From contig NC_068992.1 of assembly GCF_001194135.2 (NCBI RefSeq), forward strand, positions 7,672,245 through 7,706,488: a DNA stretch of 34,244 bases. Reading direction: 5' to 3'. The translations under genes were made by a program, and so were the position numbers. The notes beneath the pieces were generated by a model that was given only the letters and a program-made list of their open reading frames with translations, did no database searches and had not been told where the DNA came from. Source of the stretch: Octopus bimaculoides (Eukaryota). Positions 273-34,244 of this stretch are shown here, piece after piece; position 1 is the first letter of the stretch; each line of letters starts with the position of its first letter.

Positions 273-1095
273 CAAACTGTAAAGAATTCCTACTGTATAC
301 ACTTGTAAATTGTCCCCTCTACTTGGAAATATTTACAACCAGATGTGGGGGATAGCAAGGAGCAAGCTAATTAAAATCAAGTGGCTTTGAAAAGGAGCAA
401 AGCAATGACAGATTACAAATTGGTAAGCCACCTTACCCGAACCACTCAATAAACTAAAACTCTCTCCAAATAATTACTTTGCAAAATACAAAAATTTACA
501 GAATTTGCATATTAATTATTATCAAATCAAGAAGTACTATTTAATCCGAGCTGCATGAAGAAAATATAAAAGAAATTATCACTGACAAGATTCTCAGGTT
601 GTTTCCTGCGTCGATACCTATGTAGATACACATGCACACATATAAATATACACACACATATTTATATGTCTATATATATATATGTGTCCATGCGCATGCA
701 CACACACACACACACACACACACAAACGTGTACGCACACTACATACATATATCCTTTAGAGTAAAGAAATTTATATCTTTAATCTTAGCAAAGAATTTTT
801 TGAAGCCAGTTAAGTCTAACATAATTAATTATTAAAATATCTTGGTTGGAAACAAACAGACATAGCAACAACATGGATAACAGTAGCTTTGAACACAAAA
901 GTGATCGCTTACTGACTGAATATGCCTTGGCAGCATTTGGAGCTGCAGTTTTCTTAAGTTGGCCTCCAGCAGATGTCGCTGGAAGCACTGTGGCTTGATG
1001 CGGTGCTGTGCCTGTGGCTAATGAAGTGCTGGTAGCAAACTGAGAATCTTCTTTCTTTAAAAAATGCAATCTTTCAAATGGATTCATATTCTGCC

Positions 1096-1175
1096 ATATA
1101 TAGTTCTGACTCATATATAGTTCTGACTCATATATAGTTCTGACTCATATTCTGACTCATATATAGTTCTGACTC
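1096..1175. repeat. Tandem array of the 17-bp unit ATATATAGTTCTGACTC (four full copies plus one 12-bp variant)
   Basis: Full units at 1096-1112, 1113-1129, 1130-1146 and 1159-1175; short unit ATATTCTGACTC at 1147-1158. Confidence 0.95.
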
Positions 1176-1721
1176 ATGTGATTTCGCTGAGAATCAGATA
1201 ATAACTGTTCATTGAGAATCTGGAACGCTTTATTTCTATTGCGATTCTTTGGTTTTTGGTGCTGCATATCCAACCTGTGATCCCCAATATATCCCGGTAC
1301 CTTGTTATCATAAGAATCAAACTGTTGATTAAAACGTTTGTACTGATTGGTTCTTTTATATTCATCAGAATTCTGCTGTGAAAACTTATAATTTTTAGGA
1401 AAAACCGGATAATTATAATTTTTCTCATTGCTATATTGCCTACCTTGGAACAGTTGTTGAGAATCACTTTTCCCTCTTGTTATCTGAGAATTTTTATTTA
1501 ACTGCTGGTGAACAACATTTTCACTGGGGTGGGTCTTTGACTGCACTGCTTTCTGTTCCAAATATGGATTATAAGGCAGTTGCTTGACAGAGGAAGCTGG
1601 AATGTCTTTAGTGACATCTGAGAAATCATTATTAATGCATTCCATATAGCTTGGTATATGGTCTTCACTGTGAGAATAGTACATCATGTAGAAGTTGCAC
1701 ATCTCATCATCATGAGTTGGT
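1157..1721 (-). CDS. PAM: PAM/PHM coding exon 12: end of the PHM catalytic core (GPTHDDEMCNFYMMYY, CuM Met) plus a Q/N-rich linker. Stops at TGA 1159-1157 in this assembly; alternative donors at 1444, 1301 and 913
   Basis: Acceptor CAG at 1724-1722; phase 2 matches exon 11 (GG|A). The DEMCNFYMMYY motif is diagnostic of copper type II ascorbate-dependent monooxygenases. The 3' boundary is uncertain. Confidence 0.9.
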
Positions 1722-2757: not shown

Positions 2758-2810
2758 CCAATCTTTGTGACTCTATTTCGACCTGTTGAATTATAGGTAC
2801 AGCGTGCAAC
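2758..2810 (-). CDS. PAM: PAM/PHM exon 11 (VARCTYNSTGRNRVTKIG)
   Basis: tag|GTTGCA ... ATTGG|gtatgt; 53 nt, phase 0 to 2. Matches the PHM 'AARCVF..G' segment. Confidence 0.93.
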
Positions 2811-3449
2811 CTAGCAAAACAAGAGACACTATTAATTGTTTTACTTAATTTAATTTTTCATAAGACACAACAAATAATATGCTAATGTAAAAGAACCACT
2901 TAGTCCAATAGTAATTTGGGTGCTAGCATCGTTACAAGGTTTACTTTGCAATTACACAGTTCTAAGTTCAATTCCAGAAATGTAGCACCTTAGGCAAGTG
3001 TTTTCACTTATAGTTATGTGTCAACCCAAGCCTGGTGTGTGAGATCAGATTAGATGGAAACTGTTCAAAATGCCTGTTAGATTAGCTTTAGTTGTTCTTG
3101 TGTGGTAGACTTAATCAGTTATCAACTTGAACACCACCACCTGGTCCTTTTATCAGAGTTCATGCTGTTGCAAGTATTTGAAGGTTTCCTGTCTGAAGAT
3201 AACCTATTTATGGCTTCTTCTTCCTTTTTCCTTCTCAAAGGGCCTGGGAAAGGTCATAGTCAGAGATGAAGAGCAGTGCTTGGAGCCCTGAAAACTTAAC
3301 TCTTTTAAATTGTTTTCATCTAGATGGGTTTCAAATTGTTACAAGTAATTTCCTTTTCTCTGTACTAGTTCCTACTTTAATTTATCAAACAAAAGTTCTC
3401 GAAGGCAAATACAAAAGTGTCATTGTTTCAAACAGAGAACTATAATTAC

Positions 3450-3500
3450 CACAGTGTCGTTTCTTTCAATTTTGATTCTTCTCTCAATGGGATAAAAGGC
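3450..3500 (-). CDS. PAM: PAM/PHM exon 10 (AFYPIERRIKIERNDTV)
   Basis: ttttacag|GCC ... GTG|gtaatt; 51 nt, phase 0 to 0. AFYP motif. Confidence 0.93.
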
Positions 3501-4216
3501 CTGTAAAATAATAAACGACAGTTTTTAGCTAACTGAAACAGAATCAAGACATTGTACTTGTGTTTACATTGAAATAATCTATCTCTTGGCAACAAGATAA
3601 AAGTGTATTAAAATAAAAAAAATATTGGCACTAGGTTGCTAAGTAGTGAATCATTTAGGCCATGTTAACCTACTATGAGCAAATATTGCACCTGGTTCAG
3701 CAAGAGACAATGAATAAGACCAATAAAAAGCAACATTTACATGTACACACTTTCCTTCTTTCACACATACACACAAAAAATTTCATCCAATTACAAGAAA
3801 TAATATATGCATAAACCATATTAGACAATACACTGGACAATGAATAAGACTTATAAAGAGTAACTTGCTAATTATATTTCAGAGGAGGCTTATAACAAAC
3901 AATGTATAACCAATATTATACACCCAATTTATGTATAATTAAAAAATGGATTCTTTGTAGAAGCTCCTACTAGACATGGTTTCATTTCAAGAATTTGCTA
4001 AAAGTAATTATAAGCTAGATTAATTAATTTTATGAACGACTAGCTTTCCTATCTTGAACCATTTTACAGCATTGACAGCAAGTATTTTGTCCCGTTACCA
4101 ACACATGCAGACCGAATATAAACATGAATTCAGAAGTTATTTTAAAGTTTCTATAAAAACACTTTTCCTTAGTAATAATGAAAGAGTTAAAAGAGAAGAA
4201 GAAGAATTAAACTCAC

Positions 4217-4290
4217 TTGAGGCCAATGGGGATTGCTTTTCCCGATCAATGTCCAGCTTCCATTAAACTTATAAGCACTCACCACTCTTG
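4217..4290 (-). CDS. PAM: PAM/PHM exon 9 (RVVSAYKFNGSWTLIGKSNPHWPQ)
   Basis: tttcag|CAAGAG ... CCTCAA|gtgagt; 74 nt. Resembles PHM 'KVVSGYRVRNGQWTLIGRQSPQLPQ'. Confidence 0.93.
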
Positions 4291-5088
4291 CTGAAACAGT
4301 GAAAAAGATGTCAATTTTACTATGAACCCTTTCATTATGGTATTTCTAATGAGATATGCTGCCTTCATTTTAATTGATTTAGAGAATACTGACGAATTTA
4401 GTAAAATAATTGTCATTATTAACACTTTTGATATTAACCTACCCAAGACTGCCCCTGGATTCCATTGATAATCACAAAGTTATTTTACTAAAATTAATTG
4501 GAATAAAAGCAGGATATTTCAGTAGAGTTAGAGTAACAAAAGGGCTAAGCTGATGCTTAGCACACAAATCAGATAGAAATTCTGAGGAAAGGTTGTAACT
4601 TAGACCACTGTAAAATGGGAAGATTGTAACATAAAACTAAAGGCAGTCTCAGATGGGTTGATATCAAGAGGTTAAAAGGACAGACAAACATCAATCTTAT
4701 TGATTTAATATACTTTTACTGGTTTCAGTCAATGAACTGCAACCACACTGGAACAGCTGTCTTAAAAGGTTTCAGTTGCTTTGTCTCCAATATTGTATCA
4801 GGTACAAAAAAAAACTAAAAACACAAAGTTAACTGTGCCATAAAGGACATAATTTGTATGGACAAAACTACAAGAGATTTGTTTGATGCACCAATTTTGT
4901 CACCCTCATCAATACATATGCACACACACACATAAATGAACGTGCATGTGTGTGTGTGTGAAGAAACATTACTGAAGAATTTACGAAACATTTATTCTTT
5001 TACTGAAATATCTGAATAAAAACCTTTACAAAGTCTTTATTTTATTTTGTTTGTTTTAATAATAAAAGACTGTAAAATGTCTACTTGC

Positions 5089-5169
5089 CAAGATTGTGTG
5101 CATGGGTCCGAAATGCAAATGGATAAATAACTCTTCTTGGAAATTTGCAGCTAACATCAATGTTGCTTA
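5089..5169 (-). CDS. PAM: PAM/PHM exon 8 (SNIDVSCKFPRRVIYPFAFRTHAHNL; CuM His-x-His)
   Basis: tttacag|TAAGC ... CTTG|gcaagt (GC donor); 81 nt, phase 1 to 1. FAFRTHAH motif. Confidence 0.92.
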
Positions 5170-6292
5170 CTGTAAAGCACAAATGAGTTGAGTTAATAGA
5201 ATAACTGAAGTATAGTAATTAAAATTTGTGTTCGCTAACTATTGTTGATTAATCCAATGATTATAATTAACTGATTTTCAACACTTAATTGGTACTGACT
5301 GAATAAATATTAAAATAACAATATTGATATCTGACATAGGCACAAAGTCACAAATTTGGAAAGAAGGATATAATATTGACCTTCAATGTAAAGGGATATA
5401 GCTGGAGATACATGCCCAAGGTGCCAAGCAGTGGGACTGAACCCAGAACTATGTGGTTGGGAAGTAATCTTCTTAACACACAGCCATGCATACCTGCACT
5501 TTCCTTCTTTTTTAAACAATAGGACGTGGCTTGAGAGAGACTTAGTTAATGCATTTTAAATTATATATTTCACAGGTTTTTTTGTTTTTTTTAAAATATA
5601 GACATACAGCTATACTAATTTAGAAATAACAGTTAAATCAACCTAAATACTTGGCAGGTACTTAATTTGCAGGATGACTACAAAAGTGATTCCAGCAGTA
5701 TTTGAACTCAGAACATAAATGAACAAATAATGCAAGTACTCTTGGTTCTTACTCACAGCCCTTAATATTGCAATAATGATTTCAAGGATATGTAGTTATA
5801 AAGGATGGACTCTGATGAGATTTGAACTGTGAACATAAAGAACCATAATTAAATATGCCAAAGCATTTTATCCAAGACTCCACCAATTCTGCCATCCCTC
5901 AACTTTGTCATAAGAGTAATAGAAATGTGGTACTAATCACAATAAAAATCCTCAAGAAAATAGAATTGTCTGATCTAATTAAAATACAAAACGTTTGAAC
6001 ATTAGATTTTTGAATAGCATACTTGTTTCTAATAATATCTTAAAGGTATGTATATATATATATATATATGCCGGATTAGGCAACACCTGGTTTGAAGCTA
6101 CAAACAACAGCTGTTTTTTTATTACTCTCATAAAGAAGGAAAATTTCAAATGCACTTTCATAAAACCTGCTACATTCCAGACAGAAAATACATATAAATG
6201 TTTGTTCTGGAAGAAACTATCTCAATAATATCTAGAGTAGAAACGTTGTTCACACGTGATAAACAATGCTGTAATATATAATTTAACCTTAC

Positions 6293-6360
6293 ATGGAGTA
6301 GATTTGGGAACAACACCATTTTCAGAATCTAAAATAAAAATTCCTGCAGCATACTTCTGT
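6293..6360 (-). CDS. PAM: PAM/PHM exon 7 (QKYAAGIFILDSENGVVPKSTP)
   Basis: ttttcag|ACAG ... CCAT|gtaagg; 68 nt, phase 2 to 1, bridging exons 6 and 8 in frame. Confidence 0.9.
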
Positions 6361-6411
6361 CTGAAAATATGAAAAAAGAAACGACATGTAATTAACTAGT
6401 CTTTATATTAA

Positions 6412-7385
6412 ACTAGCAGAGGCACCCGGCGTTGCTCGGGAATGAAATTGTTGCTTATATACTTGAAGAAAAAAAGGCAAAATATGCTGTATAGAAATTT
6501 GAGGACATTCTGTAGATGGACTCTCAGATGAATGATGGCTGGGCGCCTCTCATGAATGGGGAAAATTGAAGATGTGCCAAAAAGCTTCATTGGTACTTGG
6601 AAACTTTTACGAAAATTAAAATGGGGATTAAATGAAAAAAATGACTTACGTGAATATCCTCACAAGAGTAATTGAAATAAATGGCGATTGTGGAACCCCC
6701 CATACACGCACGCATACACACGTGTGTCTTTGNNNNNNNNNNNNNNNNNNNNNNNNNNNNNNNNNNNNNNNNNNNNNNNNNNNNNNNNNNNNNNNNNNNN
6801 NNNNNNNNNNNNNNNNNNNNNNNNNNNNNNNNNNNNNNNNNNNNNNNNNNNNNNNNNNNNNNNNNNNNNNNNNNNNNNNNNNNNNNNNNNNNNNNNNNNN
6901 NNNNNNNNNNNNNNNNNNNNNNNNNNNNNNNNNNNNNNNNNNNNNNNNNNNNNNNNNNNNNNNNNNNNNNNNNNNNNNNNNNNNNNNNNNNNNNNNNNNN
7001 NNNNNNNNNNNNNNNNNNNNNNNNNNNNNNNNNNNNNNNNNNNNNNNNGTGTGAGACAGAGTGAGAGAGCGGTGTGTATGTAGTATTTACTCTCTCTCTC
7101 TCTCATACACACGAACACACACACACTCACACACAAAATAGAGAGTGAAGCTTTTTGCCATTGTTACGTCAATACCGGAAGTTGACATTGAGGAACCTTT
7201 TTAAAGAAGTGAATCTTAAATATAAAGCAATATTATTTATTTTCAATTAAAAAAATCAAATGAAGAGCCTAACATTTATCCGAGGTCAAATTATTCATGC
7301 ATCACAAGTATGGAAGCATTTGGTGAAGTCGATTTCACGTGAAAAGCGATTACACACACATCTCTGTTTTATATATAGTATAGAT
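6412..7385 (+). mobile_element. Non-autonomous Helitron-like element spanning a gap
   Basis: 5' end ACTAGCAGAGGCACCCGGCGTTGCTCGGG and 3' end TTTTATATATAGTATAGAT, as I recall for invertebrate non-autonomous Helitron-like families. Internal microsatellites and N gap. Confidence 0.55.
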
Positions 7386-8495
7386 TAGGCAGCTGTAAAA
7401 CTTTCTACTTAAAACGACATGTGACTAAGTAGTCTTCGTATCAAATTGAAAGTCTTACAGCTACCAAGAACTCCTAGTGTCAGCTTATAAATGTGTTTAT
7501 GTTTGAAGTACAGTATGTCAAACATCAGGTGAAGCCATCAACTACTATATTCATTTAATGATAAATTAGAACATATCCTGCACTTTACTATCAACAAACA
7601 TCAAAATAGTTTTATGTTCATGAACAATTAATTGTTTCTTTATATAAACTGTTAACAAGCCTCTTTTTTCTTAGGCTGGAAAAATGGATTGAATAACTAG
7701 ATACAGACAACAGAATGATGATTGAAGATCGCTATTTGAAGAAAACAGACAACGGTGATAATCTGTCAATTGGTTTAATATTATCATTTGGCCCATTGGT
7801 CCCTTTAGTGAAATCCACTTTGTTATCAAGCATTTGGGCCCAATCACCACTCTGTGGATAACTTTCTCCCCACCAGTCATAAAAGCACTGAAAAAGGGTT
7901 GTAAAAATTCCACCTCTAACTAAGCCATAAAAAGAAATGACGGAAAAGTGTTCTGTAGTCAAGCCTTTGTCAGGGACCAAATTTATATTCTTTAGTGAGG
8001 CAATCCTCAGAAATATGTTTGAGTATGGTGAGGAGTTTAGGAGGGGAAAAAAAGGCACACCTCTTAAGCAATAATGAATAAAGATCCAAATACATAACAG
8101 TTTATTTGTTGTAAAGAAAAGGAAAGCAATATGAATTACCAGGTACACAAAATATATACTGCCAAATAATGTCGCTTTGCACAAAGATAATTCTGTTACA
8201 ATCCAAAATGTACAGCAACTGTGCTAACCTCATCCAGTATTCCTCCTATCCACTAACCTAAAATAGCCATTTCATTCTCTTTTTCAGCCAACATATTAAG
8301 ATAAATCCTGTCTTAAACATTAAATTCTGTTTTGGAGAGAACTCACATCAATCTAGTTGATTTACTTTTGTTTACTGGCAAAAGAAAAGACATATTGCCA
8401 CTTCACTGCTTAGTTGTTAGTACTTCACATTAGGTACAGTTGTCCTATAGAATGAAAGTAAGATAGAGAAATATGTTTAGGAATTTCAAACTCAC

Positions 8496-8547
8496 TTATG
8501 CTTTGTTACATATAGAGATAATCCAGAATTATCTGCAGGCTGTGCAT
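8496..8547 (-). CDS. PAM: PAM/PHM exon 6 (DAQPADNSGLSLYVTKH)
   Basis: tacag|ATGCA ... CATAA|gtgagt; 52 nt, phase 1 to 2. DNSG motif. Confidence 0.92.
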
Positions 8548-9475
8548 CTGTAATATACAAATAAGAAAATAAGTAAACAAAAATTTTAAAAAAGAGCATT
8601 TTTATTTTATCAATAAATACCACAGTCAAATATTGAACATCTCACATCTGGAATATCATTTTCACATTTTGTCTGAAAAAAAGAAAAAATCTTAGTTTTC
8701 CCGAGGTTTCGTTGTAGTCAAATCAATGTAATTAGGAAACAGACAGTTGTTAGACAGAAATGTGTCATATGCAAATCCAAAGAATCAGTTTTCAACAGTC
8801 TCCAGACATATGCCATCTTTATTCCATCAAAAACAATGTAAAGCCTCTTCCATCTACTCTGTCAGACACTCTCATCTCTCTTTCATTGAAAATACAGATC
8901 CTCTCTCTTTGTAAAAGGCCATAGCTAAAATATATCTCCAGACATTTTTGTCTGCTGGTCATATGATTCTGCCGATACACTGCATTTCTGATATGTAGCA
9001 TGTTGTCTATTGATTTATTTTGTAGGCATGAGTCTTCTTATTTATATCAGTGAGAAAATTAGCATAATGTTCAAGAATATTAATGGAATAAAATGAAATG
9101 GTCACATGTTGGCATTGAAAGCAGATCAATGACAAAGGTACTCAACAGGTTTCACTCTAATTTTCTCACCAAACACCAAGGGATCGATTCCTTTTATAAA
9201 TTCTGAAATTTAAGTTTCAGGTTTATAGCACATAAGAAGTGAGGCTAGGTAGGTAGCATTCACATCTAAATTAAAGACATTAATAAAGTGAAGTATTGCA
9301 ATCCATAATTTCCAGGAGTCAATAATCAACTATAGACATATTACACACTTCAAAAATGTTAGCTAAGAGAGTCATTTATCTACCTTTTGTAGTAAATGGC
9401 AAGCTGTTCCACTAAAATCTAGCAAACATGAGCACAGAAATTTCATGATCTCACGTAATTCTACAGTTACTAATT

Positions 9476-9862
9476 GTTGTTGTTGGCACTCCGTCGCTTA
9501 TGATGTCGAGGGTTCCAGTTGATCCGATCGACGGAACAGCCTGCTCGTGAAATTAACGTGCAAGTGGCTGAGCACTCCACAGACACGTGTACCCTTAACG
9601 TAGTTCTCAGGGATATTCAGCGTAACACAGTGTGACGAGGCTGACCCTTTGAATTACAGGCACAACAGAAACAGGAAGTAAGAGTGAGAGAAAGTTGTGG
9701 TGGAAGAGTACAGCAGGGTTCACCACCATCCCCTGCCGGAGCCTCGTGGAGCTTTAGGTGTTTTCGCTCAATAAACACTCACAATGCCCGGTCTGGGACT
9801 TGAAACCGCGATCCTATGACTGCGAGTCCGCTGCCCTAACCACTGGGCCATTGCGCCTCCAC
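9476..9862 (-). mobile_element. Full-length young tRNA-derived SINE with 13-bp target-site duplication
   Basis: Minus-strand head GTGGAGGCGCAATGGCCCAGTGGTTAGGGCAGCGG...GGTTTCAAGTCC (A/B boxes); (CAA)n tail; TSD ACAGTTACTAATT at 9463-9475 and 9863-9875; CpGs intact. Confidence 0.9.
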
Positions 9863-10121
9863 ACAGTTACTAATTAACATAAAACTATAAAACAATAAAA
9901 TCTAAAACAATATGAAATGACATGAAATAGGTACAGCTATGAACTGAAATCAAACCAGTTCTCTTTTACCACATGAAATGAAAAACATTGTGAACATAAA
10001 TACATGCATCAATCATTAACCTTGTGTGTTTACTTTCTGTGCTCTATCAGGAAGTAATTAAAGCAAAACATAATGGGGCCAGAAACAGATCCCATAATAA
10101 GAAACCGAAAAGTTGCATCAC

Positions 10122-10199
10122 CTGAAAATTTGTTTTTGTAATGAACTTGCATGACCAAAGATGAAATGTTTGATCCTTTACCAATATGGAAACCAACAT
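10122..10199 (-). CDS. PAM: PAM/PHM exon 5 (VGFHIGKGSNISSLVMQVHYKNKFS; third CuH His)
   Basis: tacag|ATGTTG ... TTCAG|gtgatg; 78 nt, phase 1 to 1. VGF..G and QVHY motifs. Confidence 0.94.
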
Positions 10200-11749
10200 C
10201 TGTAAAGAGAAGAAGAACAGAAACAGACCAGTTTATTTGAGAATTAATTTAAAGCATTGGTGTATTTATATAATGAAATTAAAATAGTGTATCCATATGA
10301 TTAAATCAAAATCGTGTATCTATATGATTGAATTAATATGAATTTTTAGAAAAGGGAAAATATCCTTTACTATACCATTTCACATGGATTAAATAGGTAC
10401 ACGATATTGTTTCTTGTTATTCTTGACAATTGCTGATTGTTAGGCGAATACAAGTTCTCTATGCTTTATCTAACAACAATGGTGTTGCTGTGTGGTTAAG
10501 GAGTTTGATTTGCAACTAGATGTTTCAGGTTCAGTCCCACAGCACAGCACCTTGGGCAAGTATCTTCTACTATAGCCCAAGTCAGAACTTATGAGTATAT
10601 TTGGTAGACGGAAACTGGAAGGAAGCTTATCATATACACTACCATCACTTTATTATCCACTTTTCCGTGCTTACATGAGTTATAGGAACTTGTTGAGGCA
10701 GATTTTCTATGGCTGGATATCTTTCCTGTCGCTAACCATCATCTTTCTAAGCAAGGTAATATTTCCTTGTGGCTGAGAAGTTGATTACAGCAGAATTGCA
10801 GATGAATGCAACAAAGCAGTTGTCAGCAGTACAAAAGGAGATGGACACAACAAGAAGGGAGTTTTTCCTTAGTTGCAAAGTTGTCAGTTATCTCACAGTG
10901 AACTGGCTATGATAGACTGTACATAACAGCAGTGGGTATCAGACCCGCTAAGCAAGGACAACCAATGACCAACTCAAACACAGCTTTTACAAGGCAACTC
11001 AGATCAGCACCAGCAGCCCACACTAAAACACAAACATGAGTGCAACACTGATACTTATCATATTGAGACCTAAGAACCATCAGTGTTTGCCAGACATTGA
11101 TGCCTTGCTCTGGAATGCTTGAATATTGCCATGCTATAGTTCAGCATAATTCCGTTATCCTGTACTAACTGGTTGTTGTCATTATGTCTGGTTTCTATAG
11201 CGATACAGGGTAACATCATTACTCAAACTGCTCACCATTAGCTCAATGAACATACCTCCAAAGGGCAGGGCTGTGGTTAAACTCGTGCAGTTTGTGAGCT
11301 TACTAGAGTGCCTTACACTGAAGACACACCCACATTTGCACACTATATCTGTCTATTGAGAAGACAACATTAGCTCAATGATTAATATTATTTCAGTCAA
11401 ATCTTGGCAAGTAAGAGTGACAACTTTGGACATGTTTTGATACTATTAGTGATAACAGAATCGATGTAATGATGGACAATAATGTTCATATGCACGAATG
11501 AAACATTTTCATAATGTCCGACAGAAATTTTCTAAACTGCTGCTTCTTACACCCAAAACCATGCCACAAGCAGAACAAAAGCAAAAGCTTTCCTCTAAAA
11601 GGACTAAAAGACAAAGGAAGAAAAAGCACGCATCACCTGCACCAAAACTTAAATATGCCAATGCAGTGTGCACTACCTCTAAAAGCCAGCCCTGTCCAGA
11701 AGCCATGATAAGGGTTGCAGCTGAGCAACAATCAGAGACTAGCATCAGT

Positions 11750-12250
11750 GTACACAGTATGAATGAGATCCAAATTGTTTGTGAAGTAGAGATTGAATAT
11801 ATTGTTTGCCCTGGCTGGTTGGAGTATTACTTGCTCTATGTCTAACTTATTGGTGAAGTTGTGCAGGGATTCCACATGTCTTTTTCCACATTGCATTATT
11901 CCTGAGAGGGAAAGGCCCTCGAGCCATCCTACATTGGGGGCAGGTTGGGGTCTCTCATGAGAAGTACACGGACGAACTGTTCATGTTTGGTCAAGGCTTC
12001 TTTTCTCCACAAGCAGTCTTTGAATAGGCCGGTGTGATTTGGATCATCTGGTGGGCAATAAGTAGTACATATAACTATATTGAGTTAACTTATATGTACA
12101 ATTAGTGCGTCACACACCGAGTTTGGGTGTGACAAAAGAATCTGGTGCATGAGATCTTCATGCTGGTACATTCCAAGCCACATGACTCCTATCTTTTCTG
12201 TTGCTTTGCGATATAACATGTATTTCTGCATCTGCAATGTTAGCTTTTAG
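11750..12250 (-). mobile_element. Decayed LINE (CR1/L2/Jockey-type) endonuclease fragment
   Basis: Minus-strand translation gives YCPPD, LMRDPNLP (compare GDFNLP) and EQVILQPARANNIFNLYFTNNLDLI (compare PTRGNNILDL.LTN). Confidence 0.65.
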
Positions 12251-12412
12251 GTGCATTTCAGTATGTTACATATCCTGAAAATACATATTTCAAATCATCT
12301 TTTCCTAAGACTTTTATTAACTGGCACTTAGTAAAAATTTAAGCAGTTTCTGAGCTGAGCGATAGATGATGATTAGTAAGATAAACAATTAAGCATAGAA
12401 ATTAATACTTAC

Positions 12413-12498
12413 TACAAGGTAGCTTAGCTGGATCAGCATTCTTTGCCCATGCAAAAAGGATTTGAGCTACATCTTTTTTACATATAGTCCCACATGAC
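12413..12498 (-). CDS. PAM: PAM/PHM exon 4 (WSCGTICKKDVAQILFAWAKNADPAKLPC)
   Basis: ccttttag|GTCATG ... TGTA|gtaagt; 86 nt, phase 2 to 1. ILFAWAKNA motif. Confidence 0.94.
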
Positions 12499-12865
12499 CT
12501 AAAAGGAAAAAAAAAATGCAGTATTGTTTAAAACTGTTGTTGTCATATTTTTGTTTAACTCTTTCGTTATCATATTTCTTACAAGATGCTGTGTATCTTT
12601 CAATTAATTTTAAATATAACAAAGAATTTAGTAAAATAACTTAGTTATCATTAAGCTAGTGTTAGGAACATAAATTGTGACTAAGGTTTGGTGGAAGATT
12701 TTAATTCAGAACTTTTGAAAATAAGACATTTGTACTACAGAGCCAGAGGTGGTTTCAGCCAGTTTGGTATCAAAAGGGCTGAATACACTGTATACACACA
12801 CACACACACAAATAAATACATACATAAAAACATAGACTGATGAGAATGTTGCATACATTGGTGCA

Positions 12866-13096
12866 GTGACTAAAGCCAGAATAACAAAAGAGTACTTCTG
12901 CAGACTCCAAAAAATATGGAACTCAGAGCTGTCTGCATTTAACAAGATTTTATCTCACAATGGTTTGGCAGTAATAGTGCTAGTACCAACATTTGGGGTA
13001 CTGGACTGGACACTTGATGAGATACGCAGCCAGGACATCAAAACCAGAAATGTACTGACCACCATATTAACAGCAACACTGATAGGATTTATGTGA
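12866..13096 (+). mobile_element. Non-LTR retrotransposon RT C-terminal fragment (R4/Dong-like)
   Basis: KIWNSELSAFNKILSHNGLAVIVLVPTFGVLDWTLDEIRSQDIKTRNVLT resembles the 'NK..AIN..AVPV..Y..G...WT..EL..LD.KTRK.LT' region. Confidence 0.6.
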
Positions 13097-13826
13097 GACA
13101 AAACCTTGGCAGTGGAGGCATAAAATCAGTTCAATGTCGTTAAGAAGGACATTTAGCCATAAAAACCATGCCAAAACAGACAGAGCTTAGTCTTTATACC
13201 TGCCAGCTCCTATCAAACTGTCCAGCCCATACCAGCATGGAGAACAGATGTCAAATGATGACAATGATGATAATATATACACAACAGGTATTTCTACTAA
13301 AGCAGCACATTTGTTTTTGTGTCTCTGTCACACTCTAACCTTTCATCATCTGGCACAAGATCACCTCCTCCAATTCCTCCCTCCCCTGTCAAAGGATTTT
13401 TGTCTTGCAAGTTACTTGGTGATCCTGCCATGTCAGTGCCACATAAAACGCATCCAGTAGACACTGTAAAGTGGCTGACATTTGGAAGGGCATCCAGCTT
13501 GTATAAACCATGCCAAAACTGACATCACCTACGCTGGTACCAAATACTGTTCTTCAAATTCCTTACTATCTTTCAAGGAGATTCAAAAGTCTAATATCTT
13601 AGGACTTCACAGTGTCAGCAGATATTGAATGAATTTGACCATCTGTTTAATGAAATATTCTCTACACCTTTTTTTGTTCTTTTATTCAAGCAGAGTTGAC
13701 TGAACATAAACCAGTAGCAACAAGTCTTAACTCTTAAGATAGCAAGCCTTTGTAGAAAACACAATAGCCATGGCTAAAAGGCATTAGATTTAATTTGACC
13801 CAAAAACTTTACACAAAACAACTCAC

Positions 13827-13914
13827 CAAATACCACCAACTGTTAATGGCTCCTGGCAACCAAATAAAATGATATGATGAGCAATGACTGCATCTGATAG
13901 TGATTCAAATTTAA
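13827..13914 (-). CDS. PAM: PAM/PHM exon 3 (VKFESLSDAVIAHHIILFGCQEPLTVGGIW; CuH His-His)
   Basis: tttcag|TTAAA ... ATTTG|gtgagt; 88 nt, phase 1 to 2. AHHIILFGC motif. Confidence 0.95.
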
Positions 13915-14017
13915 CTGAAAATAATATGGAAAATAAGATCAAATATAAATTGGGTGAAAATATATAAACTATGTAAATTTCACAACTATTCTAATTACAT
14001 TCAACAAATCTTGTTTG

Positions 14018-14053
<36 letters not shown>

Positions 14054-14055
<2 letters not shown>

Positions 14056-14298
14056 TCATCATCATCGTTTAACGTCCGCTTTCCATGCTAGCATGGGTTG
14101 GACGATTTGACTGAGGACTGGTGAAACCGGATGGCAACACCAGGCTCCAATCTAAATTTGGCAGAGTTTCTACAGCTAGATGCCCTTCCTAATGCCAACC
14201 ACTCAGAGAGTGTAGTGGGTGCTTTTACGTGTCACCCGCACGAAGGCCAGTCAGGCGATACTGGCAACGGCCATGCTCGAAATGGTCTCTTTTATGTG
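14054..14298 (-). mobile_element. Young high-copy SINE/RTE-tail repeat with (CAT)n/(ATG)n tail, truncated by a gap
   Basis: Near-identical by eye to the reverse complement of 30412-30659. Confidence 0.8.
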
Positions 14299-15038
14299 NN
14301 NNNNNNNNNNNNNNNNNNNNNNNNNNNNNNNNNNNNNNNNNNNNNNNNNNNNNNNNNNNNNNNNNNNNNNNNNNNNNNNNNNNNNNNNNNNNNNNNNNNN
14401 NNNNNNNNNNNNNNNNNNNNNNNNNNNNNNNNNNNNNNNNNNNNNNNNNNNNNNNNNNNNNNNNNNNNNNNNNNNNNNNNNNNNNNNNNNNNNNNNNNNN
14501 NNNNNNNNNNNNNNNNNNNNNNNNNNNNNNNNNNNNNNNNNNNNNNNNNNNNNNNNNNNNNNNNNNNNNNNNNNNNNNNNNNNNNNNNNNNNNNNNNNNN
14601 NNNNNNNNNNNNNNNNNNNNNNNNNNNNNNNNNNNNNNNNNNNNNNNNNNNNNNNNNNNNNNNNNNNNNNNNNNNNNNNNNNNNNNNNNNNNNNNNNNNN
14701 NNNNNNNNNNNNNNNNNNNNNNNNNNNNNNNNNNNNNNNNNNNNNNNNNNNNNNNNNNNNNNNNNNNNNNNNNNNNNNNNNNNNNNNNNNNNNNNNNNNN
14801 NNNNNNNNNNNNNNNNNNNNNNNNNNTTCTCTCAAGATACTTGGCCCGAGGCTATAGTAGAAGACACTTGCCCAAGGTGCCATGCAGTGGGGCTGAACCC
14901 GGAACCATGTGGATCGTAAACATGCTACTTACCACACAGCCACCAAACAAAAGCAAATTTGCTCTAACAACAAGCAAAATCCTATTTTGTGAAAACTCAT
15001 CCCAACTATACATAAAGTGGATTATAAAATAATTTTAC

Positions 15039-15093
15039 CAATATAATTGGTTTCCTTGGACAGCTTTTTACTGGTGCATAAGTATTCATCATC
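15039..15093 (-). CDS. PAM: PAM/PHM exon 2 (DDEYLCTSKKLSKETNYI)
   Basis: ttttag|GATGAT ... ATTG|gtaaaa; 55 nt, phase 0 to 1. D.YLC motif. Confidence 0.92.
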
Positions 15094-15741
15094 CTAAAAC
15101 AAAAGAGCAAATATCATTAGTGGCTTCCCCACCAAAAAAAAAAAAAAAATCTAAAGGAAATTAAATTCATTGACAATTCCTAAAACAGTAAAATTAATAG
15201 AAAATAAAATTCTGAAAGTATAATTCCAAAACACAGGCAATCCTAAACTTTGACATTATAACCTCAGGAACTATAATGAAAAGACTGGGTCCGATGACAG
15301 AGCTCTGGAAAGGTTCTTATGTAGTCCCTTGACCAGCTAGAAATAGCAGCCAAATCTTCAAATTACACCCTATCACTTAAAACAAAAAGGAAGGACACAT
15401 TGAATAATATTGTTCTAGATACACTGTCTGCAATAAAAAGAGAAAAAATGCTGGATGATCATAGATGGAATGTATTTGATAAAAAGTCTCCTTGTCAATT
15501 CTGATCATAGTTGATTATGTCTAGTCAGTAGTTTTGGGGATGAGCATCATCACACCCTGTCCTCATTCACTGCAAATGACCAAACCAGCAAAGCTGCCTC
15601 CATTCATCGACAGTCACAACACAACATTAACCGGACCAAAGTAGCCATTTAACTATGACAAGGGCTTTCTGGTTGGGCAGTTATAAGAAACAGTGATAAT
15701 ATCAAGAAAATTAAGAGAACAGACTGAGAAATCCTACTTAC

Positions 15742-15939
15742 CTTAGATGGTCTGGCTCCAGGCATAGTGATTGCTATTTTCTCTAGATCTAAATCCTCAA
15801 AGTTTTTCACCTTCCTTGTCACTGGATCTAAACAAGTATTTTTCTCTGTGACTACATGAGTAGTAATAGTACCTAGGAAAGTGCAGACCAGCAGTAACAA
15901 AGCCAACAGCAGGGAGGTGTGTGGCAGAACCGAGATCAT
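15742..15939 (-). CDS. PAM: PAM/PHM first coding exon: signal peptide MISVLPHTSLLLALLLLVCTFLG through ITMPGARPSK
   Basis: ATG at 15939; hydrophobic leader; MPG..P motif at the start of the PHM core; donor AAG|gtaagt. An acceptor ttag| at 15974 implies an upstream 5' exon. Confidence 0.9.
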
Positions 15940-17729: not shown

Positions 17730-19220
17730 TAAATATACACACATACATACGTACGTACGTACATACACACACACATAAAAACGTAGAGACACATGTACGT
17801 ATATATACATACACATATATGTAGACACATACACATATATGTAGACACATACCTATACACACACAGACGTACGTATATATACACACACACACATACGTAT
17901 ACACAAACACACACCTACACGTATATGTACAGACATATACGTACGTATATACACACATATACGTACGTATATAGACACATAAACGTACGTACGTACATAC
18001 ACACACACACGTACGTACGTACATACATACAAAGACACACACATACGTACATACGTAGATACAAACACACATATACGTACGTAGGTACACACACATATAC
18101 GTACGTACATACACATACACACGCACACATACGTACGTATACACACACGTCAGAACGTATATACACACACGTACGTATACTCACATACGTACATATACAC
18201 ACGTNNNNNNNNNNNNNNNNNNNNNNNNNNNNNNNNNNNNNNNNNNNNNNNNNNNNNNNNNNNNNNNNNNNNNNNNNNNNNNNNNNNNNNNNNNNNNNNN
18301 NNNNNNNNNNNNNNNNNNNNNNNNNNNNNNNNNNNNNNNNNNNNNNNNNNNNNNNNNNNNNNNNNNNNNNNNNNNNNNNNNNNNNNNNNNNNNNNNNNNN
18401 NNNNNNNNNNNNNNNNNNNNNNNNNNNNNNNNNNNNNNNNNNNNNNNNNNNNNNNNNNNNNNNNNNNNNNNNNNNNNNNNNNNNNNNNNNNNNNNNNNNN
18501 NNNNNNNNNNNNNNNNNNNNNNNNNNNNNNNNNNNNNNNNNNNNNNNNNNNNNNNNNNNNNNNNNNNNNNNNNNNNNNNNNNNNNNNNNNNNNNNNNNNN
18601 NNNNNNNNNNNNNNNNNNNNNNNNNNNNNNNNNNNNNNNNNNNNNNNNNNNNNNNNNNNNNNNNNNNNNNNNNNNNNNNNNNNNNNNNNNNNNNNNNNNN
18701 NNNNNNNNNNNNCACACATATGTACCTATATATTCACACATACGTATGTACGTACATATTCACACATATGAACCTATATATTCACACATACGTACGCATA
18801 GATACATACGTAGTTACAGACACATACGTACGTATATACACACACAAATGTGCGAATATCGTGTGTATACGTGCGTTTATGCACACATATGTGCGTATAT
18901 GAACACATATACGTGCGTATATGCACACATATATACGTGCGTATAGACACACATATATACGTGCGTATAGACACACATACGTACGTATAAGCACGCATAT
19001 ACGTACGTATAAGCACGCATATACGTACGTATAAGCACGCATATACGTACGTATAAGCACACATATACGTACGTATAAGCACACATATACGTACGTATAG
19101 ACACATATACATACGTATAGACACATATACACTCAAGTACAAACAATCTTACGTACAAACACACATATTCTTACATGCATATACACATACGTACGTATAC
19201 ACACACACACACACACACGT
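17730..19220. repeat. Complex (AC)/(AT)/(ACGT) microsatellite field with gap
   Basis: Directly visible; includes about 22-bp higher-order units (ATATACGTACGTATAAGCACGC) near 18980-19100. Confidence 0.95.
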
Positions 19221-20590: not shown

Positions 20591-20624
20591 AAATATTAAC
20601 CAAGAATATATACATCACACCTAA

Positions 20625-21190
<566 letters not shown>

Positions 21191-25129: not shown

Positions 25130-25450
25130 GAGTACGGCCAGGCACCAGGTATCTCACTCCTTAGTCATCTCACCTGAAAGGTGCAGTGTCCTGCGGTCAT
25201 TCTTCAATACTTCATCCATGTCTTCCTGATCTTCCTCTTCTATGTGTTCCATCCACTTGGAAAGATTGGCACTTCTTTATGGGGCTGTAATCATCCATCC
25301 GCATCACATGACCAAACCAGTACTGTCTTCTCTCTTGCACACACCAAACAATTCCTCTTATGCCTAACTTTCTCTCAGAACACTGGCAGTCTGTTGAACA
25401 TATACACTTGTATTACACATCCAGCGGAGCATACTGCCCTCAGTCCTTTC
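25130..25450 (-). mobile_element. RTE LINE 3' fragment
   Basis: Minus-strand translation resembles RRGR.RKTW.EV.KND.R.L; homologous to 31120-31650. Confidence 0.6.
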
Positions 25451-25461
25451 TAACCTTTAGT

Positions 25462-25977
25462 TGGTGGGATGTGAAAGGTTTAGTTCACTTTGAACTTTTA
25501 AACCCAAACCAAATGATAGCAAAGTTCTACTGTGAGCAACTAGAGTGGCTTAAGTCAGTGCTAGAAGAAAAACAACCATCTTTGATTTCAAGACAAAAGG
25601 TATTCTTCCATCAGGATAATGCTCAGCCACATACAGCAAGGACATTCCAAAGGTTGGAGCAGTTTGAATGGGAAACGATGCTCCACTCAACATATTCGCC
25701 AAACATTGCTCCATCTGATTATCATTTATTCCACAGTTTTCAAAATTATTTGGATGAAAAAATATGAATTCTGTAGATGAGGTTAGAACAGTACTGGTGG
25801 ATTATTTTTCGTCATGGACAAGTGAATTTTAGAAGAGAGGCCTTGCAAGTCTATCAGATAGAGGAAAAGCATTGTAGAATATGAAAGGAGAGCATATTTT
25901 AGATTAGAAAAGCAGTTTGTTAATCTTAATTTTGAAAGAATGATGAAAAACAGCATTATTTATGGGATGACCCCATA
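25462..25977 (+). mobile_element. Mariner (Tc1/mariner) transposase C-terminal remnant with right TIR
   Basis: WWDVKGLVHFELL...YCEQL...FFHQDNAQPHTA...YSPNIAPSDYHLFHS. Catalytic D-D spacing is 33 here versus the canonical 34. Stops and frameshifts follow. TIR-like end TTATGGGATGACCCCA-TA. Confidence 0.9.
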
Positions 25978-26892
25978 TTTAAAGGTACGGGTAATCTTAT
26001 GAATACACGAAACTCTAAGATCTAATTATTATTAGTTAGATTGTTCTTATCTCTATATTTGAAAATTTCATATAATTCCATACAACATAGTTTACATCCG
26101 TATGGGCTATTTGTTTATGGCTGAGAAAAGGAAAGGGGGAAAAAAGAACAGTAGACGGGCGGCGGAAGCCATTGTAACGCTGACCGAACCCAAAGCACCT
26201 CCAGTGGGAAATGTGCCACCGGAGAGGGAGACTTTGTCAGCAGGAATTGTGCCGCTGACAGAGCAGTATGAGGTCCCTCCCTGAGAGGAAGAGGAGTTAT
26301 ATGTTCTCCTGTACCATGAGGGAGGGACTATTGACAGTTTCTTGGACCGCGAGTGCGGTCAACGAGAAGCGTGTGTGCGATGACGAAAACGGCGCTGTCG
26401 GCCGCCGAACGTGCCAAAGCAACGATGCCGGGATGGCGAGCGCGAGGAGATCGCGACTAGTTCAACGTGACGAGAAATATCGTGACAAAAGCCAGGAGTA
26501 ATTTTGACAAAGAGAACTTTGTCGGCCTCNNNNNNNNNNNNNNNNNNNNNNNNNNNNNNNNNNNNNNNNNNNNNNNNNNNNNNNNNNNNNNNNNNNNNNN
26601 NNNNNNNNNNNNNNNNNNNNNNNNNNNNNNNNNNNNNNNNNNNNNNNNNNNNNNNNNNNNNNNNNNNNNNNNNNNNNNNNNNNNNNNNNNNNNNNNNNNN
26701 NNNNNNNNNNNNNNNNNNNNNNNNNNNNNNNNNNNNNNNNNNNNNNNNNNNNNNNNNNNNNNNNNNNNNNNNNNNNNNNNNNNNNNNNNNNNNNNNNNNN
26801 NNNNNNNNNNNNNNNNNNNNNNNNNNNNNNNNNNNNNNNNNNNNNNNNNNNNNNNNNNNNNNNNNNNNNNNNNNNNNNNNNNNNNCCCCAGT

Positions 26893-31119: not shown

Positions 31120-31650
31120 ATGTGACACCAACAACAACCACAGCTATGATTTTAATTGGCTTGACAGGTTTTCTCAAGCACAGTATCTCACCAAAGTCTT
31201 GGCCACTAGTCATTCCCTCCATGAAGTGCAACATTTGAAGATCATGCTTCACCACCTCATCCCATGTCTTCTTGTGTCTCCCTCTTCCACAGGTTCCTTC
31301 CACTGATAGAGATCATCACATCTTCCCACAACTGTCCACATTGATACGCATCGCATGACTGTACCAATGCAATCACATCTGATGCCTCTTATGCCAAACT
31401 TCTCTCTTAAGACACTTACACTCTGTCATACATGCACATTGACATTACACATCCTGCGAAGCATACTAGCTTCAGTTCTTTCAAGCCCACACATGTACTC
31501 AGCAACCACAGCCTATGTAACATGGCTGTTCACACACTGGCATCATACAATCTGCCTATCAGAGGTAGGGGCTCGCTGAACTTTGCCCAACCTGTTCTTA
31601 TTCTAGCAGCTGACTTGGCCACCTAGGTAACAGAAGCTATCAACTACTTC
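31120..31650 (-). mobile_element. RTE LINE 3' fragment
   Basis: Minus-strand EGTCGRGRHKKTWDEVVKHDLQML (GR..KTW motif). Confidence 0.7.
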
Positions 31651-32646: not shown

Positions 32647-32854
32647 GGTAATTTTTCAGATTAACAACTGCACGATCTTCACTAGGGTTTTAGGGTCATG
32701 GTTAGGGTTACGGTTAGGGTTTTAGAGTTTGGGTTAGGGAATTCCGTCCCTAACGTAACCGTAACCGTAACCCTTAAAACCCTAACCCTGACCCTAAAAC
32801 CCTAACCCTAACACCCTAGGGAAGATCGTGCGGGTGTTAATCTGAAAAATTACC
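32647..32854. mobile_element. 208-bp foldback/MITE-like element with about 42-bp TIRs and inward telomere-like repeats
   Basis: Left arm GGTAATTTTTCAGATTAACAactGCACGATCTTCaCTAGGGT matches the reverse complement of the right arm with 3 mismatches. TTAGGG-like units on the left, CCCTAA-like units on the right. No clear TSD. Confidence 0.8.
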
Positions 32855-33164
32855 TTTCATTCTGGTGGGTATCAGAGCGTTTGAGTGACATCAGACCCCA
32901 ACAAACGCCCATAAATTAAATTCATCTATCTGTGTCACGATCGTGACCCGTCGCGCTTTATGTGTTAAAATATGAAAGTATTGTCCACTCTCGAAAGAAA
33001 AAATGTTTTTGAGTGTGTGTTCCTTTTCTAACCAAAATTGACATTTTCATTGCAACCTATTTCCTATGTCAAAACAGCGTTATTTTTGTCTGACATTCTT
33101 TTCCTATTGCTTCATTTCCGCCATAGCTGAATAGTACTTTCGTTTTAGTTGCGTTAAAGAGAAG

Positions 33165-34090: not shown

Positions 34091-34244
34091 GTTTGTATAC
34101 GTTTACTTTCTTTTCTAGTTCACCACTTTAAAGTTAATCCTATACAACAGAATCAGAAATTAGCTAATTGAAGAAAACCAGACAAGCTGAGAAGGAAAAC
34201 AATAATAATAATATACACCTCTTTCTTTTACTTGTTTCAGTCAT

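What the first reader, a model, noticed from the sequence alone, without database searches (positions are those of the whole stretch)
785..1180. A coding VNTR puts stop codons in the PAM linker yet restores the frame: a possible PHM-only versus full PAM switch
Seen: the PHM frame (1777, frame-matched to 1114) reads ...QRNH-MSQNYI-TGA, passes two TGA stops inside the 17-bp array, then resumes as MSQNYIWQNMNPF... for 110 open codons to 785. The excess over a single repeat unit is exactly 63 nt (3x17+12). A one-unit allele would give one continuous ORF. Known: PAM is usually bifunctional (PHM-linker-PAL), and soluble monofunctional PHM arises elsewhere by splicing, proteolysis or separate genes. 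Inference: repeat copy number could act as a heritable or somatic switch between secreted PHM-only and longer forms. It could equally be a recent loss-of-function allele or an assembly artefact.
Basis: partly seen in the sequence, partly recalled or inferred. Interest (0 to 1): 0.75.

Follow-up and report, generated by a model that had tools for sequence, protein, structure and literature searches.

The report
Truncating 17-bp repeat expansion in PAM gene
A young 17-base tandem repeat has expanded inside an optional coding extension of a mollusc peptide-amidating enzyme gene and puts a stop codon there; it looks like an ordinary recent truncating mutation, not a designed switch.

Summary
On the minus strand, 1177-1098 holds 17+12+17+17+17 nt of ATGAGTCAGAACTATAT. 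It adds 63 nt and puts TGA stops at 1159-1157 and 1147-1145, and the old frame then runs on to 785.

A sister-species contig has one unit and one continuous 244-codon ORF. The segment after the array is conserved as coding (6 synonymous to 1 non-synonymous change).

The "switch" reading is not supported:
- Every allele with two or more units stops at the same codon (...MSQNYI*).
- All three frames are closed across the array.
- Frame restoration is therefore a one-in-three coincidence that does not change the protein.

The array also lies 266 nt downstream of a splice donor, CAAG|GTAGGC in phase 1, at 1444|1443. A bivalve PAM gene has the identical donor in the same phase, where it joins the monooxygenase (PHM) exon to the first lyase (PAL) exon. 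The main bifunctional transcript therefore probably removes the array, and only a read-through or long-linker isoform is truncated. The PHM catalytic core is untouched.

Best reading: a recent truncating minisatellite allele, possibly heterozygous. An assembly error in copy number remains possible. No PAL exons lie in the window. Copy-number variation between individuals could not be tested.

The parts
1444..1721 (-). Last PHM exon up to the conserved donor. It encodes (G)PTHDDEMCNFY... (CuM ligand Met), the end of the catalytic core and the LPYNPYLEQKA motif.
   Evidence: Acceptor ttgcag|a at 1723-1722, in frame with the exon at 2810-2758. Aligns to rat PHM structures and to PAM proteins P0096 and P0105.
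1442..1443 (-). GT of the splice donor CAAG|GTAGGC, phase 1. Probable orthologue of the PHM-to-PAL intron donor.
   Evidence: The same 10-mer in the same phase occurs in sister species L001 and in bivalve genomic contig L006. In L006 it is followed about 1.3 kb later by tttttag|AA ATG ATT TAT GAT, the first PAL exon. This matches the mRNA-derived protein P0096...AEQ-E-MVYDPSWPDK. It is one of the two best-scoring donors in the exon (tied with 1467).
913..1443 (-). Read-through coding extension, in frame with PHM. It is Q/N-rich, has KR sites, and contains the array.
   Evidence: The ORF continues about 170 codons past the donor in L001. Window versus L001 dN/dS is 0.30 for 1440-1180 and 0.04 for 1114-913. 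The two indels downstream of the donor are 24 and 63 nt, both multiples of 3.
1098..1177 (-). Minisatellite array: 17 + 12 + 17 + 17 + 17 nt of ATGAGTCAGAACTATAT. The sister species has one unit.
1157..1159 (-). First in-frame TGA, created at the junction of unit 1 and the 12-nt unit. The predicted product ends ...SQRNHMSQNYI.
1145..1147 (-). Second in-frame TGA.
913..1114 (-). Post-array segment, MSQNYIWQNMNPFERLHFLKKEDSQFATSTSLATGTAPHQATVLPATSA...AAKAYSV. It is strongly conserved as protein.
   Evidence: Six synonymous and one non-synonymous difference from L001. The one indel is 24 nt.
911..912 (-). Candidate second donor TCA|GTAAGC, also phase 1. It would make 1443-913 an optional long linker.
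   Evidence: Read from the sequence. Identical in L001. Same phase as 1443. Weak consensus score. Not verified.
785..912 (-). Continuation of the ORF through a hydrophobic stretch, LLCSKLLLSMLLLCLFV, to TAA at 787-785. In L001 the ORF ends 19 codons earlier, at TAA where the window has CAA (844-842).
   Evidence: 3 synonymous, 1 non-synonymous; Kyte-Doolittle 2.37. Whether this stretch is coding or intron is unresolved.
2758..15094 (-). Upstream PHM exons: 15094-15038, 13914-13827 (HH), 12498-12413, 10199-10122 (QVHY), 8539-8496, 6360-6293, 5169-5085 (HxH), 4286-4217, 3500-3453, 2810-2758. One more exon ends at 15751.
   Evidence: tblastn and splice-site reading. Pfam. PDB alignment. No stops or frameshifts in these exons.

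Best explanation
The window carries a PAM-type peptide-amidating enzyme gene on the minus strand, probably from a mollusc.

Its last monooxygenase (PHM) exon has a conserved phase-1 donor at 1444|1443. By orthology this donor should lead to lyase (PAL) exons beyond the left edge of the window. If the donor is skipped, the same frame continues into a conserved extension of about 170-215 codons. That extension is either a PHM-only isoform ending in a hydrophobic tail, or an optional long linker that uses a second phase-1 donor at 913|912.

Inside the extension, one 17-nt unit has recently expanded to 17+12+17+17+17 nt. The likely mechanism is replication slippage or unequal exchange, helped by an imperfect direct repeat already present at the site. 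Because 17 is not a multiple of 3, the first added unit reads ATA TGA, and the read-through isoform ends at ...MSQNYI.

The truncated product keeps the whole catalytic core and loses the conserved distal segment plus whatever follows it (the hydrophobic tail, or PAL). The canonical spliced isoform would be unaffected, which would explain why the allele is tolerated.

This is a young truncating allele, possibly heterozygous or polymorphic. It is not a programmed switch.

Shown directly: the array, the stops, the one-unit intact orthologue, coding constraint on both sides of the array, the identical donor in a bivalve PAM gene, and an intact PHM core.

Inferred: use of the 1443 donor in this species, PAL exons downstream, the mutational mechanism, and the allele's recency and frequency.
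For: - Array and stops.
- Four perfect 17-mers, which implies a young array.
- Sister-species contigs from three sequencing runs have one unit and a continuous 244-codon ORF.
- After the array there are 6 synonymous and 1 non-synonymous changes (dN/dS 0.04). Before it, dN/dS is 0.30-0.36. Indels are 39, 24 and 63 nt, all multiples of 3. The extension was therefore coding until very recently and carries no other damage.
- Every modelled allele with two or more units stops at residue 187 of the exon, and all three frames are closed across the array.
- The PHM core is complete, with copper ligands HH, H, HxH and M.
- The nearest homologues are bifunctional PAMs, not the mollusc PHM-only genes.
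- The identical CAAG|GTAGGC phase-1 donor joins PHM to PAL in bivalve contig L006.
- Rat PAM is known to produce forms with and without a linker, and monooxygenase-only forms, by alternative splicing: PMC2289459.
Against: - There is no transcript evidence for either isoform in this species or its sister.
- PAL exons are not in the window, so the bifunctional status of the gene is inferred.
- No reads or second individuals could be examined. Fixation, heterozygosity and assembly error cannot be told apart. Exact-sequence look-ups for the window's own ORFs found nothing.
- The window comes from a gapped draft assembly with five runs of N. Three identical 17-mers in a row leave the exact copy number open to assembler error.
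- The window has also lost the stop codon that ends the ORF in L001 (CAA at 844-842). That could mean a longer history of decay of this isoform.
- Synonymous divergence in the exon (0.17-0.41) exceeds flank divergence (0.05-0.07). This is unexplained.
Confidence: 0.6

Rival explanations
1. Assembly artefact. The real genome has one unit, or a different number, and the extra copies come from mis-resolving a short tandem repeat or from merging two haplotypes in a gapped draft assembly.
For: The window has five N gaps of 237-528 nt, so it comes from a scaffolded draft. Three consecutive identical 17-mers (51 nt) cannot be counted by short k-mers. The downstream ORF is otherwise pristine.
Against: The first stop comes from the junction of unit 1 with the distinctive 12-nt variant, only 29 nt from unique flank. 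An assembler does not invent such a variant. The whole array is 80 nt, shorter than ordinary reads. Assemblers more often collapse tandem repeats than expand them (general knowledge).
Confidence: 0.15
2. Fixed loss of the read-through isoform in this species. The expansion is not a rare allele but part of the decay of an extension that is no longer needed.
For: There are two lesions on the same lineage: the stops in the array, and the loss of the terminal stop that L001 has (TAA in L001, CAA at 844-842 in the window).
Against: Apart from the array there are no frameshifts or stops, and 6 of 7 substitutions after it are synonymous. The units are still identical. Without an outgroup, it is not known which state is ancestral at 844-842.
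Confidence: 0.15
3. Programmed or reversible copy-number switch. Gain and loss of units toggles heritably or somatically between a truncated soluble PHM and a longer form.
For: Unit 1 and unit 5 are identical, so a single unequal exchange could delete exactly 63 nt and restore the one-unit allele. Alternative forms of PAM have known biological uses in rat (PMC2289459).
Against: Only the one-unit state is ON. All states with two or more units give the same product, so there is no periodic on/off pattern as in contingency loci, and frame restoration has no effect. The sister species shows a plain single unit in three runs. A conserved donor upstream of the array already offers the usual way to choose isoforms. 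There is no evidence of polymorphism.
Confidence: 0.03
4. The stops are bypassed, by A-to-I editing of UGA to UGG, by translational readthrough, or by removal of the array as a tiny intron. The restored frame would then give a full-length protein with a 21-residue insert.
For: Both stops are TGA and the frame is restored. If the animal is a cephalopod, RNA recoding is common in that group (general knowledge).
Against: The RNA around the array folds no better than shuffled sequence (z = +0.67), so there is no double-stranded substrate for editing. A 5' G neighbour is the context least favoured by ADAR (general knowledge). Two stops would both need bypass. An intron under 70 nt with weak sites is unlikely.
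Confidence: 0.02

Closest known systems
Alternative forms of vertebrate PAM: optional linker between PHM and PAL, and monooxygenase-only forms (rat PAM; PMC2289459)
   Same: A PAM-type gene in which sequence just after the PHM domain is optionally included. Including it decides whether soluble monofunctional PHM can arise. Dibasic KR sites are present in the optional part. There are two donors in the same phase (1443 and 912).
   Different: Here the optional part is a read-through of the conserved donor, not a cassette exon, and has no sequence similarity to the rat linker. No transcript data exist. In this allele the long form is cut short by a mutation, not by regulated splicing.
Mollusc bifunctional PAM genes (P0096 mRNA-derived, 811 aa; scallop PAM P0105; bivalve genomic contig L006)
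   Same: PHM core exons are 47-78% identical, exon by exon, to P0096. Shared sequence motifs include RCTYNS, NPxWPQAFYP and LPxNPxLE (P0096 has RCVYNS at the first). The CAAG|GTAGGC phase-1 donor after the last PHM exon is identical.
   Different: In L006 the read-through ORF ends after 14 codons. In the window lineage it runs about 170-215 codons and is under constraint. PAL, the transmembrane segment and the cytosolic domain are not visible in the window.
Separate monofunctional PHM genes (e.g. scorpion PHMm, PMC6669573; bivalve PHM-only proteins P0036 and P0053)
   Same: They would also give PHM without PAL.
   Different: They belong to a different orthogroup. They carry an insertion after the HH motif and have PQMFY and ARCTM signatures, and are only 35-37% identical to the window protein in the alignment.
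Bacterial contingency loci (phase variation by repeat copy number inside an ORF)
   Same: A tandem repeat inside a coding region whose unit length is not a multiple of 3.
   Different: Contingency tracts cycle ON and OFF as units are added. Here every state above one unit is OFF at the same codon. This is a eukaryotic gene with a 17-nt unit and no evidence of hypermutability.
Truncating tandem-duplication or minisatellite alleles in eukaryotic coding exons (ordinary loss-of-function variants)
   Same: An out-of-frame duplicated unit creates an immediate premature stop. The copies are perfect and young. The orthologue is intact.
   Different: Nothing essential. The only unusual point is that the total insertion happens to be a multiple of 3.

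Membership tests
PHM (copper type II ascorbate-dependent monooxygenase, peptidylglycine-hydroxylating) | Both Pfam domains, Cu2_monooxygen and Cu2_monoox_C | tested here: met
   PF01082 at E = 9.8e-15 and PF03712 at E = 1e-33, on the assembled exons.
PHM (copper type II ascorbate-dependent monooxygenase, peptidylglycine-hydroxylating) | Copper ligands: HH and H (CuH site), HxH and M (CuM site) | tested here: met
   AHH, QVHY, THAHNLGK and DEMCNFY align with the corresponding rat PHM residues. E = 3e-66 over residues 33-307 of chain 4e4z_A.
Bifunctional PAM | PAL (NHL-repeat lyase) domain encoded downstream of PHM in the same gene | not testable with these tools
   tblastn with PAL-containing PAMs finds no PAL match in the window. 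Only 1443 nt (or 912 nt) lie beyond the candidate donors, which is shorter than several introns of this gene.
Bifunctional PAM | PHM domain groups with bifunctional PAMs rather than with monofunctional PHM genes | tested here: met
   The best matches in the exhaustive search are PAMs with PAL (P0096, P0105, P0095, P0099). Sequence signatures and identity favour PAM: 46% to P0096 over the full alignment, with the long tail diluting the figure, against 35-37% to PHM-only proteins. No formal tree was built.
Bifunctional PAM | Conserved PHM-to-PAL intron (position, phase, donor) | tested here: met
   CAAG|GTAGGC, phase 1, lies 20-33 codons after the LExKA motif in the window and L001. L006 has the identical 10-mer in the same phase, 17 codons after the motif, followed by the first PAL exon.
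Phase-variable / contingency switch | Successive copy numbers alternate between ON and OFF | tested here: not met
   All modelled alleles with two or more units end at the same codon. Only one unit is ON.
Phase-variable / contingency switch | Copy number varies among individuals or cells | not testable with these tools
   No reads or other individuals of this species were available. The window's own ORFs are absent from the contig collection. The sister species shows one state in three runs.
In-frame coding VNTR | Unit length is a multiple of 3, so copies add peptide repeats | tested here: not met
   The unit is 17 nt, with one 12-nt variant. Stops occur in all frames.
C-terminal membrane or GPI anchor signal | Hydrophobic stretch at the extreme C-terminus, preceded by small residues and a polar spacer, with a conserved stop | tested here: inconclusive
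   LLCSKLLLSMLLLCL has a Kyte-Doolittle mean of 2.37. In L001 the ORF ends 4 residues after it (SVSN*); in the window it runs 20 codons further. The 3 synonymous to 1 non-synonymous count is too few to decide. A GTAAGC donor candidate precedes the stretch. No anchor predictor was available.

The most novel reading that the evidence does not exclude
The 17-nt array is a reversible, heritable on/off element. Unequal exchange between its identical first and last units would restore the one-unit allele. In natural populations it would toggle a conserved alternative isoform of a neuropeptide-amidating enzyme between an anchored or long-linker form and a truncated soluble PHM. This would be an animal counterpart of a contingency locus. 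A smaller novel point is that the read-through extension past the conserved PHM-to-PAL donor is an undescribed, selectively maintained PAM isoform in this mollusc lineage.
Probability: 0.03. Interest if true: 0.75.

Novelty: new member of a known kind. Interest (0 to 1): 0.22.

Why it matters
If real, the allele is a natural knockout of one PAM isoform that leaves the catalytic PHM core, and probably the canonical bifunctional transcript, intact. It could be used to ask what the long C-terminal extension does. For genome annotation, the region shows that a long conserved ORF continues past a conserved splice donor, so gene models may miss or mis-join an isoform here. It does not change what is known about amidation. 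The "frame-restoring switch" that made the finding look special does not hold up.

Tried and rejected
- Same-species evidence. Exact look-ups of the two ORFs flanking the array found nothing. The homology search found only the sister-species protein P0001.
- Patchy index. The word-indexed homology search appears incomplete. It missed P0096, which the exhaustive search found. Absence of hits there is therefore weak evidence.
- P0093/L004, a PAM with NHL repeats, comes from a compact, gene-dense genome and was dropped as irrelevant.
- P0094, P0096 and P0097 were first taken for cephalopod PAM paralogues. That was rejected. The run holding P0097 is adjacent in accession number to Mytilus coruscus runs, so they are probably bivalve PAM orthologues. 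The species assignment rests only on accession adjacency.
- P0101/L007, another mollusc's long exon, was examined as a model for an internal linker exon. It lacks the CAAG|GTAGG donor and has several phase-1 donor candidates. Its tail resembles the window's only weakly (E = 0.005 over 41 residues). It is left as ambiguous.
- RNA editing or structure. The fold of 1040-1240 is no better than shuffles.
- Accession numbers of the sister-species runs are not mentioned in any searchable paper, so that species is unknown.
- Literature on cephalopod or octopus PAM genes gave nothing specific.
- A rat PHM sequence recalled from memory was used only as a probe to locate exons. Membership rests on Pfam and PDB searches.

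Full report
**1. What is in the sequence**

The window is AT-rich eukaryotic DNA (34% G+C). It has many microsatellites and five runs of N, so it comes from a scaffolded draft assembly.

On the minus strand, 1177-1098 reads ATGAGTCAGAACTATAT / ATGAGTCAGAAT / then the 17-mer three more times. The four 17-mers are identical. Shuffled sequence gives 0.16 such matches on average.

Translating from the exon start gives ...SDSQRNHMSQNYI*VRI*VRTIYESELYMSQNYIWQNMNPF...KILC*. There are TGA codons at 1159-1157 and 1147-1145. The array is 63 nt longer than one unit, so the frame after it equals the frame before it.

**2. The gene**

Exons of a peptidylglycine-hydroxylating monooxygenase (PHM) lie on the minus strand from about 15.8 kb down to 1721. 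All have canonical splice sites and consistent phases.

- The joined exons hit both Pfam copper-monooxygenase domains.
- They align over the whole catalytic core to rat PHM crystal structures at E = 3e-66.
- The copper ligands HH, H, HxH and M are all present.
- The core ends near 1590, about 400 nt before the array. The repeat does not touch catalysis.

An exhaustive profile search places the protein nearest to bifunctional PAMs. These include P0096 (811 aa, from an RNA contig, with PHM, PAL and a transmembrane segment), scallop PAM, and an annelid PAM. The window shares signatures with them, and not with the mollusc PHM-only genes.

No lyase (PAL) exon is in the window. The "cephalopod" origin was not verified. 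The evidence only says lophotrochozoan, probably mollusc.

**3. A related species**

Three sequencing runs of one related species gave identical genomic contigs (L001-L003) covering this exon. They have a single unit (ACGAGTCAGAACTATAT). Their ORF is unbroken for 244 codons, from the Met of DEMCNFY to a TAA just after a hydrophobic stretch.

Comparison with the window:

| Segment | Result |
|---|---|
| Before the array | dN/dS 0.30-0.36 |
| 1114-913, after the array | 6 synonymous, 1 non-synonymous; dN/dS 0.04 |
| Indels | 39, 24 and 63 nt, all multiples of 3 |
| Introns and flanks | 5-7% divergence |

The sequence on both sides of the array is therefore protein-coding in this frame and was under purifying selection until very recently. 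The expansion is the only lesion. Its copies are still perfect, so it is young.

**4. Why frame restoration means nothing**

Alleles were built with 1-5 plain units, and with the 12-nt unit plus 1-5 units.

- Every allele with more than one unit ends at the same codon (...MSQNYI*), because the first added unit reads ATA TGA.
- All three frames carry stops across the array.
- The state is binary: one unit is open and anything else is closed. The multiple-of-3 total is a one-in-three coincidence with no effect on the product.
- The RNA around the array folds no better than shuffled sequence (z = +0.67). This gives no support to rescue by RNA editing.

**5. Where the array sits in the transcript**

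A bivalve genomic contig, L006, carries the homologous exon, and about 1.3 kb further on the first two PAL exons. L006 is probably Mytilus, judged only from the adjacency of its run accession to Mytilus coruscus runs.

In L006 the PHM exon ends ...AAG CAA G|GTAGGC. The next exon starts tttttag|AA ATG ATT TAT GAT. This reproduces the mRNA-derived protein ...Q-E-M-(V/I)-Y-D-P.

The window and L001 have the identical CAAG|GTAGGC, in the same phase 1, at 1444|1443. This lies 20-33 codons after the conserved LExKA motif, against 17 codons in L006. It ties with 1467 for the highest donor score in the exon.

I infer that the canonical bifunctional mRNA is spliced here, 266 nt upstream of the array.

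The conserved ORF beyond the donor must then belong to a second isoform that reads through it. There are two options:

- It ends in the hydrophobic tail, LLCSKLLLSMLLLCL. The Kyte-Doolittle mean is 2.37, and in L001 the stop follows 4 residues later (SVSN*), although the window has CAA at that position.
- It uses a second phase-1 donor, TCA|GTAAGC, at 913|912. That would make 1443-913 an optional long linker.

The data cannot decide between these. There are only 3 synonymous and 1 non-synonymous change after 912. I lean slightly towards an optional long linker or internal exon.

Both options have precedent in rat PAM. There, alternative splicing yields forms with and without a linker, and monooxygenase-only forms. 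The linker allows soluble PHM to be released by endoproteolysis (PMC2289459). The window's extension contains KR sites.

**6. Mechanism proposed**

The ancestral site already held an imperfect direct repeat (GAGTCAGAACTATAT / TGGCAGAATATGA). Slippage or unequal exchange there probably produced the array.

The consequence is truncation of the read-through isoform only. The catalytic core is kept. The highly conserved distal 67 or more residues are lost, together with the tail or any downstream domains. The canonical isoform should be spared, which makes the allele tolerable.

Whether the allele is heterozygous, polymorphic or fixed is unknown.

**7. Rivals**

- Assembly error in copy number (0.15). 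The 12-nt junction variant next to unique flank argues against it, but three identical units in a gapped draft leave room for error.
- Fixed decay of the isoform in this species (0.15). Loss of the L001 stop codon fits this. The otherwise clean ORF does not.
- A programmed reversible switch (0.03). One-step reversion between identical end units is mechanistically possible. However, the on/off logic of contingency loci is not met, and no polymorphism is known.
- Bypass of the stops (0.02).

**8. Verdict**

The attractive interpretation fails on the point that made it attractive.

This is most likely an ordinary young truncating minisatellite allele in an alternatively used part of a PAM gene. 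The by-product worth keeping is the evidence for a conserved read-through isoform beyond the PHM-to-PAL donor.

Noticed in passing
window 913-1443 (minus); L001 337-780: A long ORF continues in frame past a splice donor that is conserved from bivalve to this lineage, and it is under purifying selection. This suggests an unannotated read-through or long-linker PAM isoform.
   Followed up: partly
window 1441-1639 (minus): There is a patch of unusually high divergence from the sister species just after the PHM core (dS 0.41, dN 0.15, plus a 39-nt indel). Introns and flanks differ by only 5-7%. The cause is unknown; relaxed constraint, positive selection or conversion from a paralogue are possibilities.
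   Followed up: no
window 842-844 (minus): The window has CAA where the sister species has the TAA that ends its ORF. The window ORF therefore runs 20 codons further, to TAA at 787-785. Which state is ancestral is unknown.
   Followed up: partly
window 33135-34115 (+): An uninterrupted 327-codon ORF with PARP12/ZAP-like CCCH zinc fingers and a weak WWE match (Pfam PF25261 at E = 1e-10). It is a separate gene on the opposite strand.
   Followed up: partly
window 32690-32818: Interstitial telomere-like repeats in inverted orientation, (TTAGGG)n followed by (CCCTAA)n.
   Followed up: no
window 25312-25764 (+): A fragment of a mariner-type transposase (Pfam Transposase_1 at E = 1.7e-9) inside the region upstream of the PHM gene. 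Neighbouring short ORFs at 25215-25412 and 31121-31312 (minus) gave no Pfam match.
   Followed up: partly
window 6733-7048, 14299-14826, 18205-18712, 20737-20973, 26530-26885: Five runs of N (237-528 nt) show that this is a scaffolded draft. Two of them lie in PHM introns.
   Followed up: no
window 17730-19220 and 20600-21190: Large, complex (ACAT/ACGT/AT)n microsatellite and minisatellite blocks with periods of 22-48 nt. The genome is generally prone to tandem repeats.
   Followed up: no
window 4286-4291 (minus): A tandem acceptor, tttcagcaag|A. Only the distal AG keeps the PHM frame (LGK-VVSAYKF). The proximal CAG would shift it.
   Followed up: no
L007 785-1579 (SRR26493809): Another mollusc also has a 264-codon ORF running on from the last PHM exon, with a His-run, an RNRNR motif and a Pro-rich end. 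It resembles the window's tail only weakly (E = 0.005). Long read-through ORFs after this exon may recur across molluscs.
   Followed up: partly
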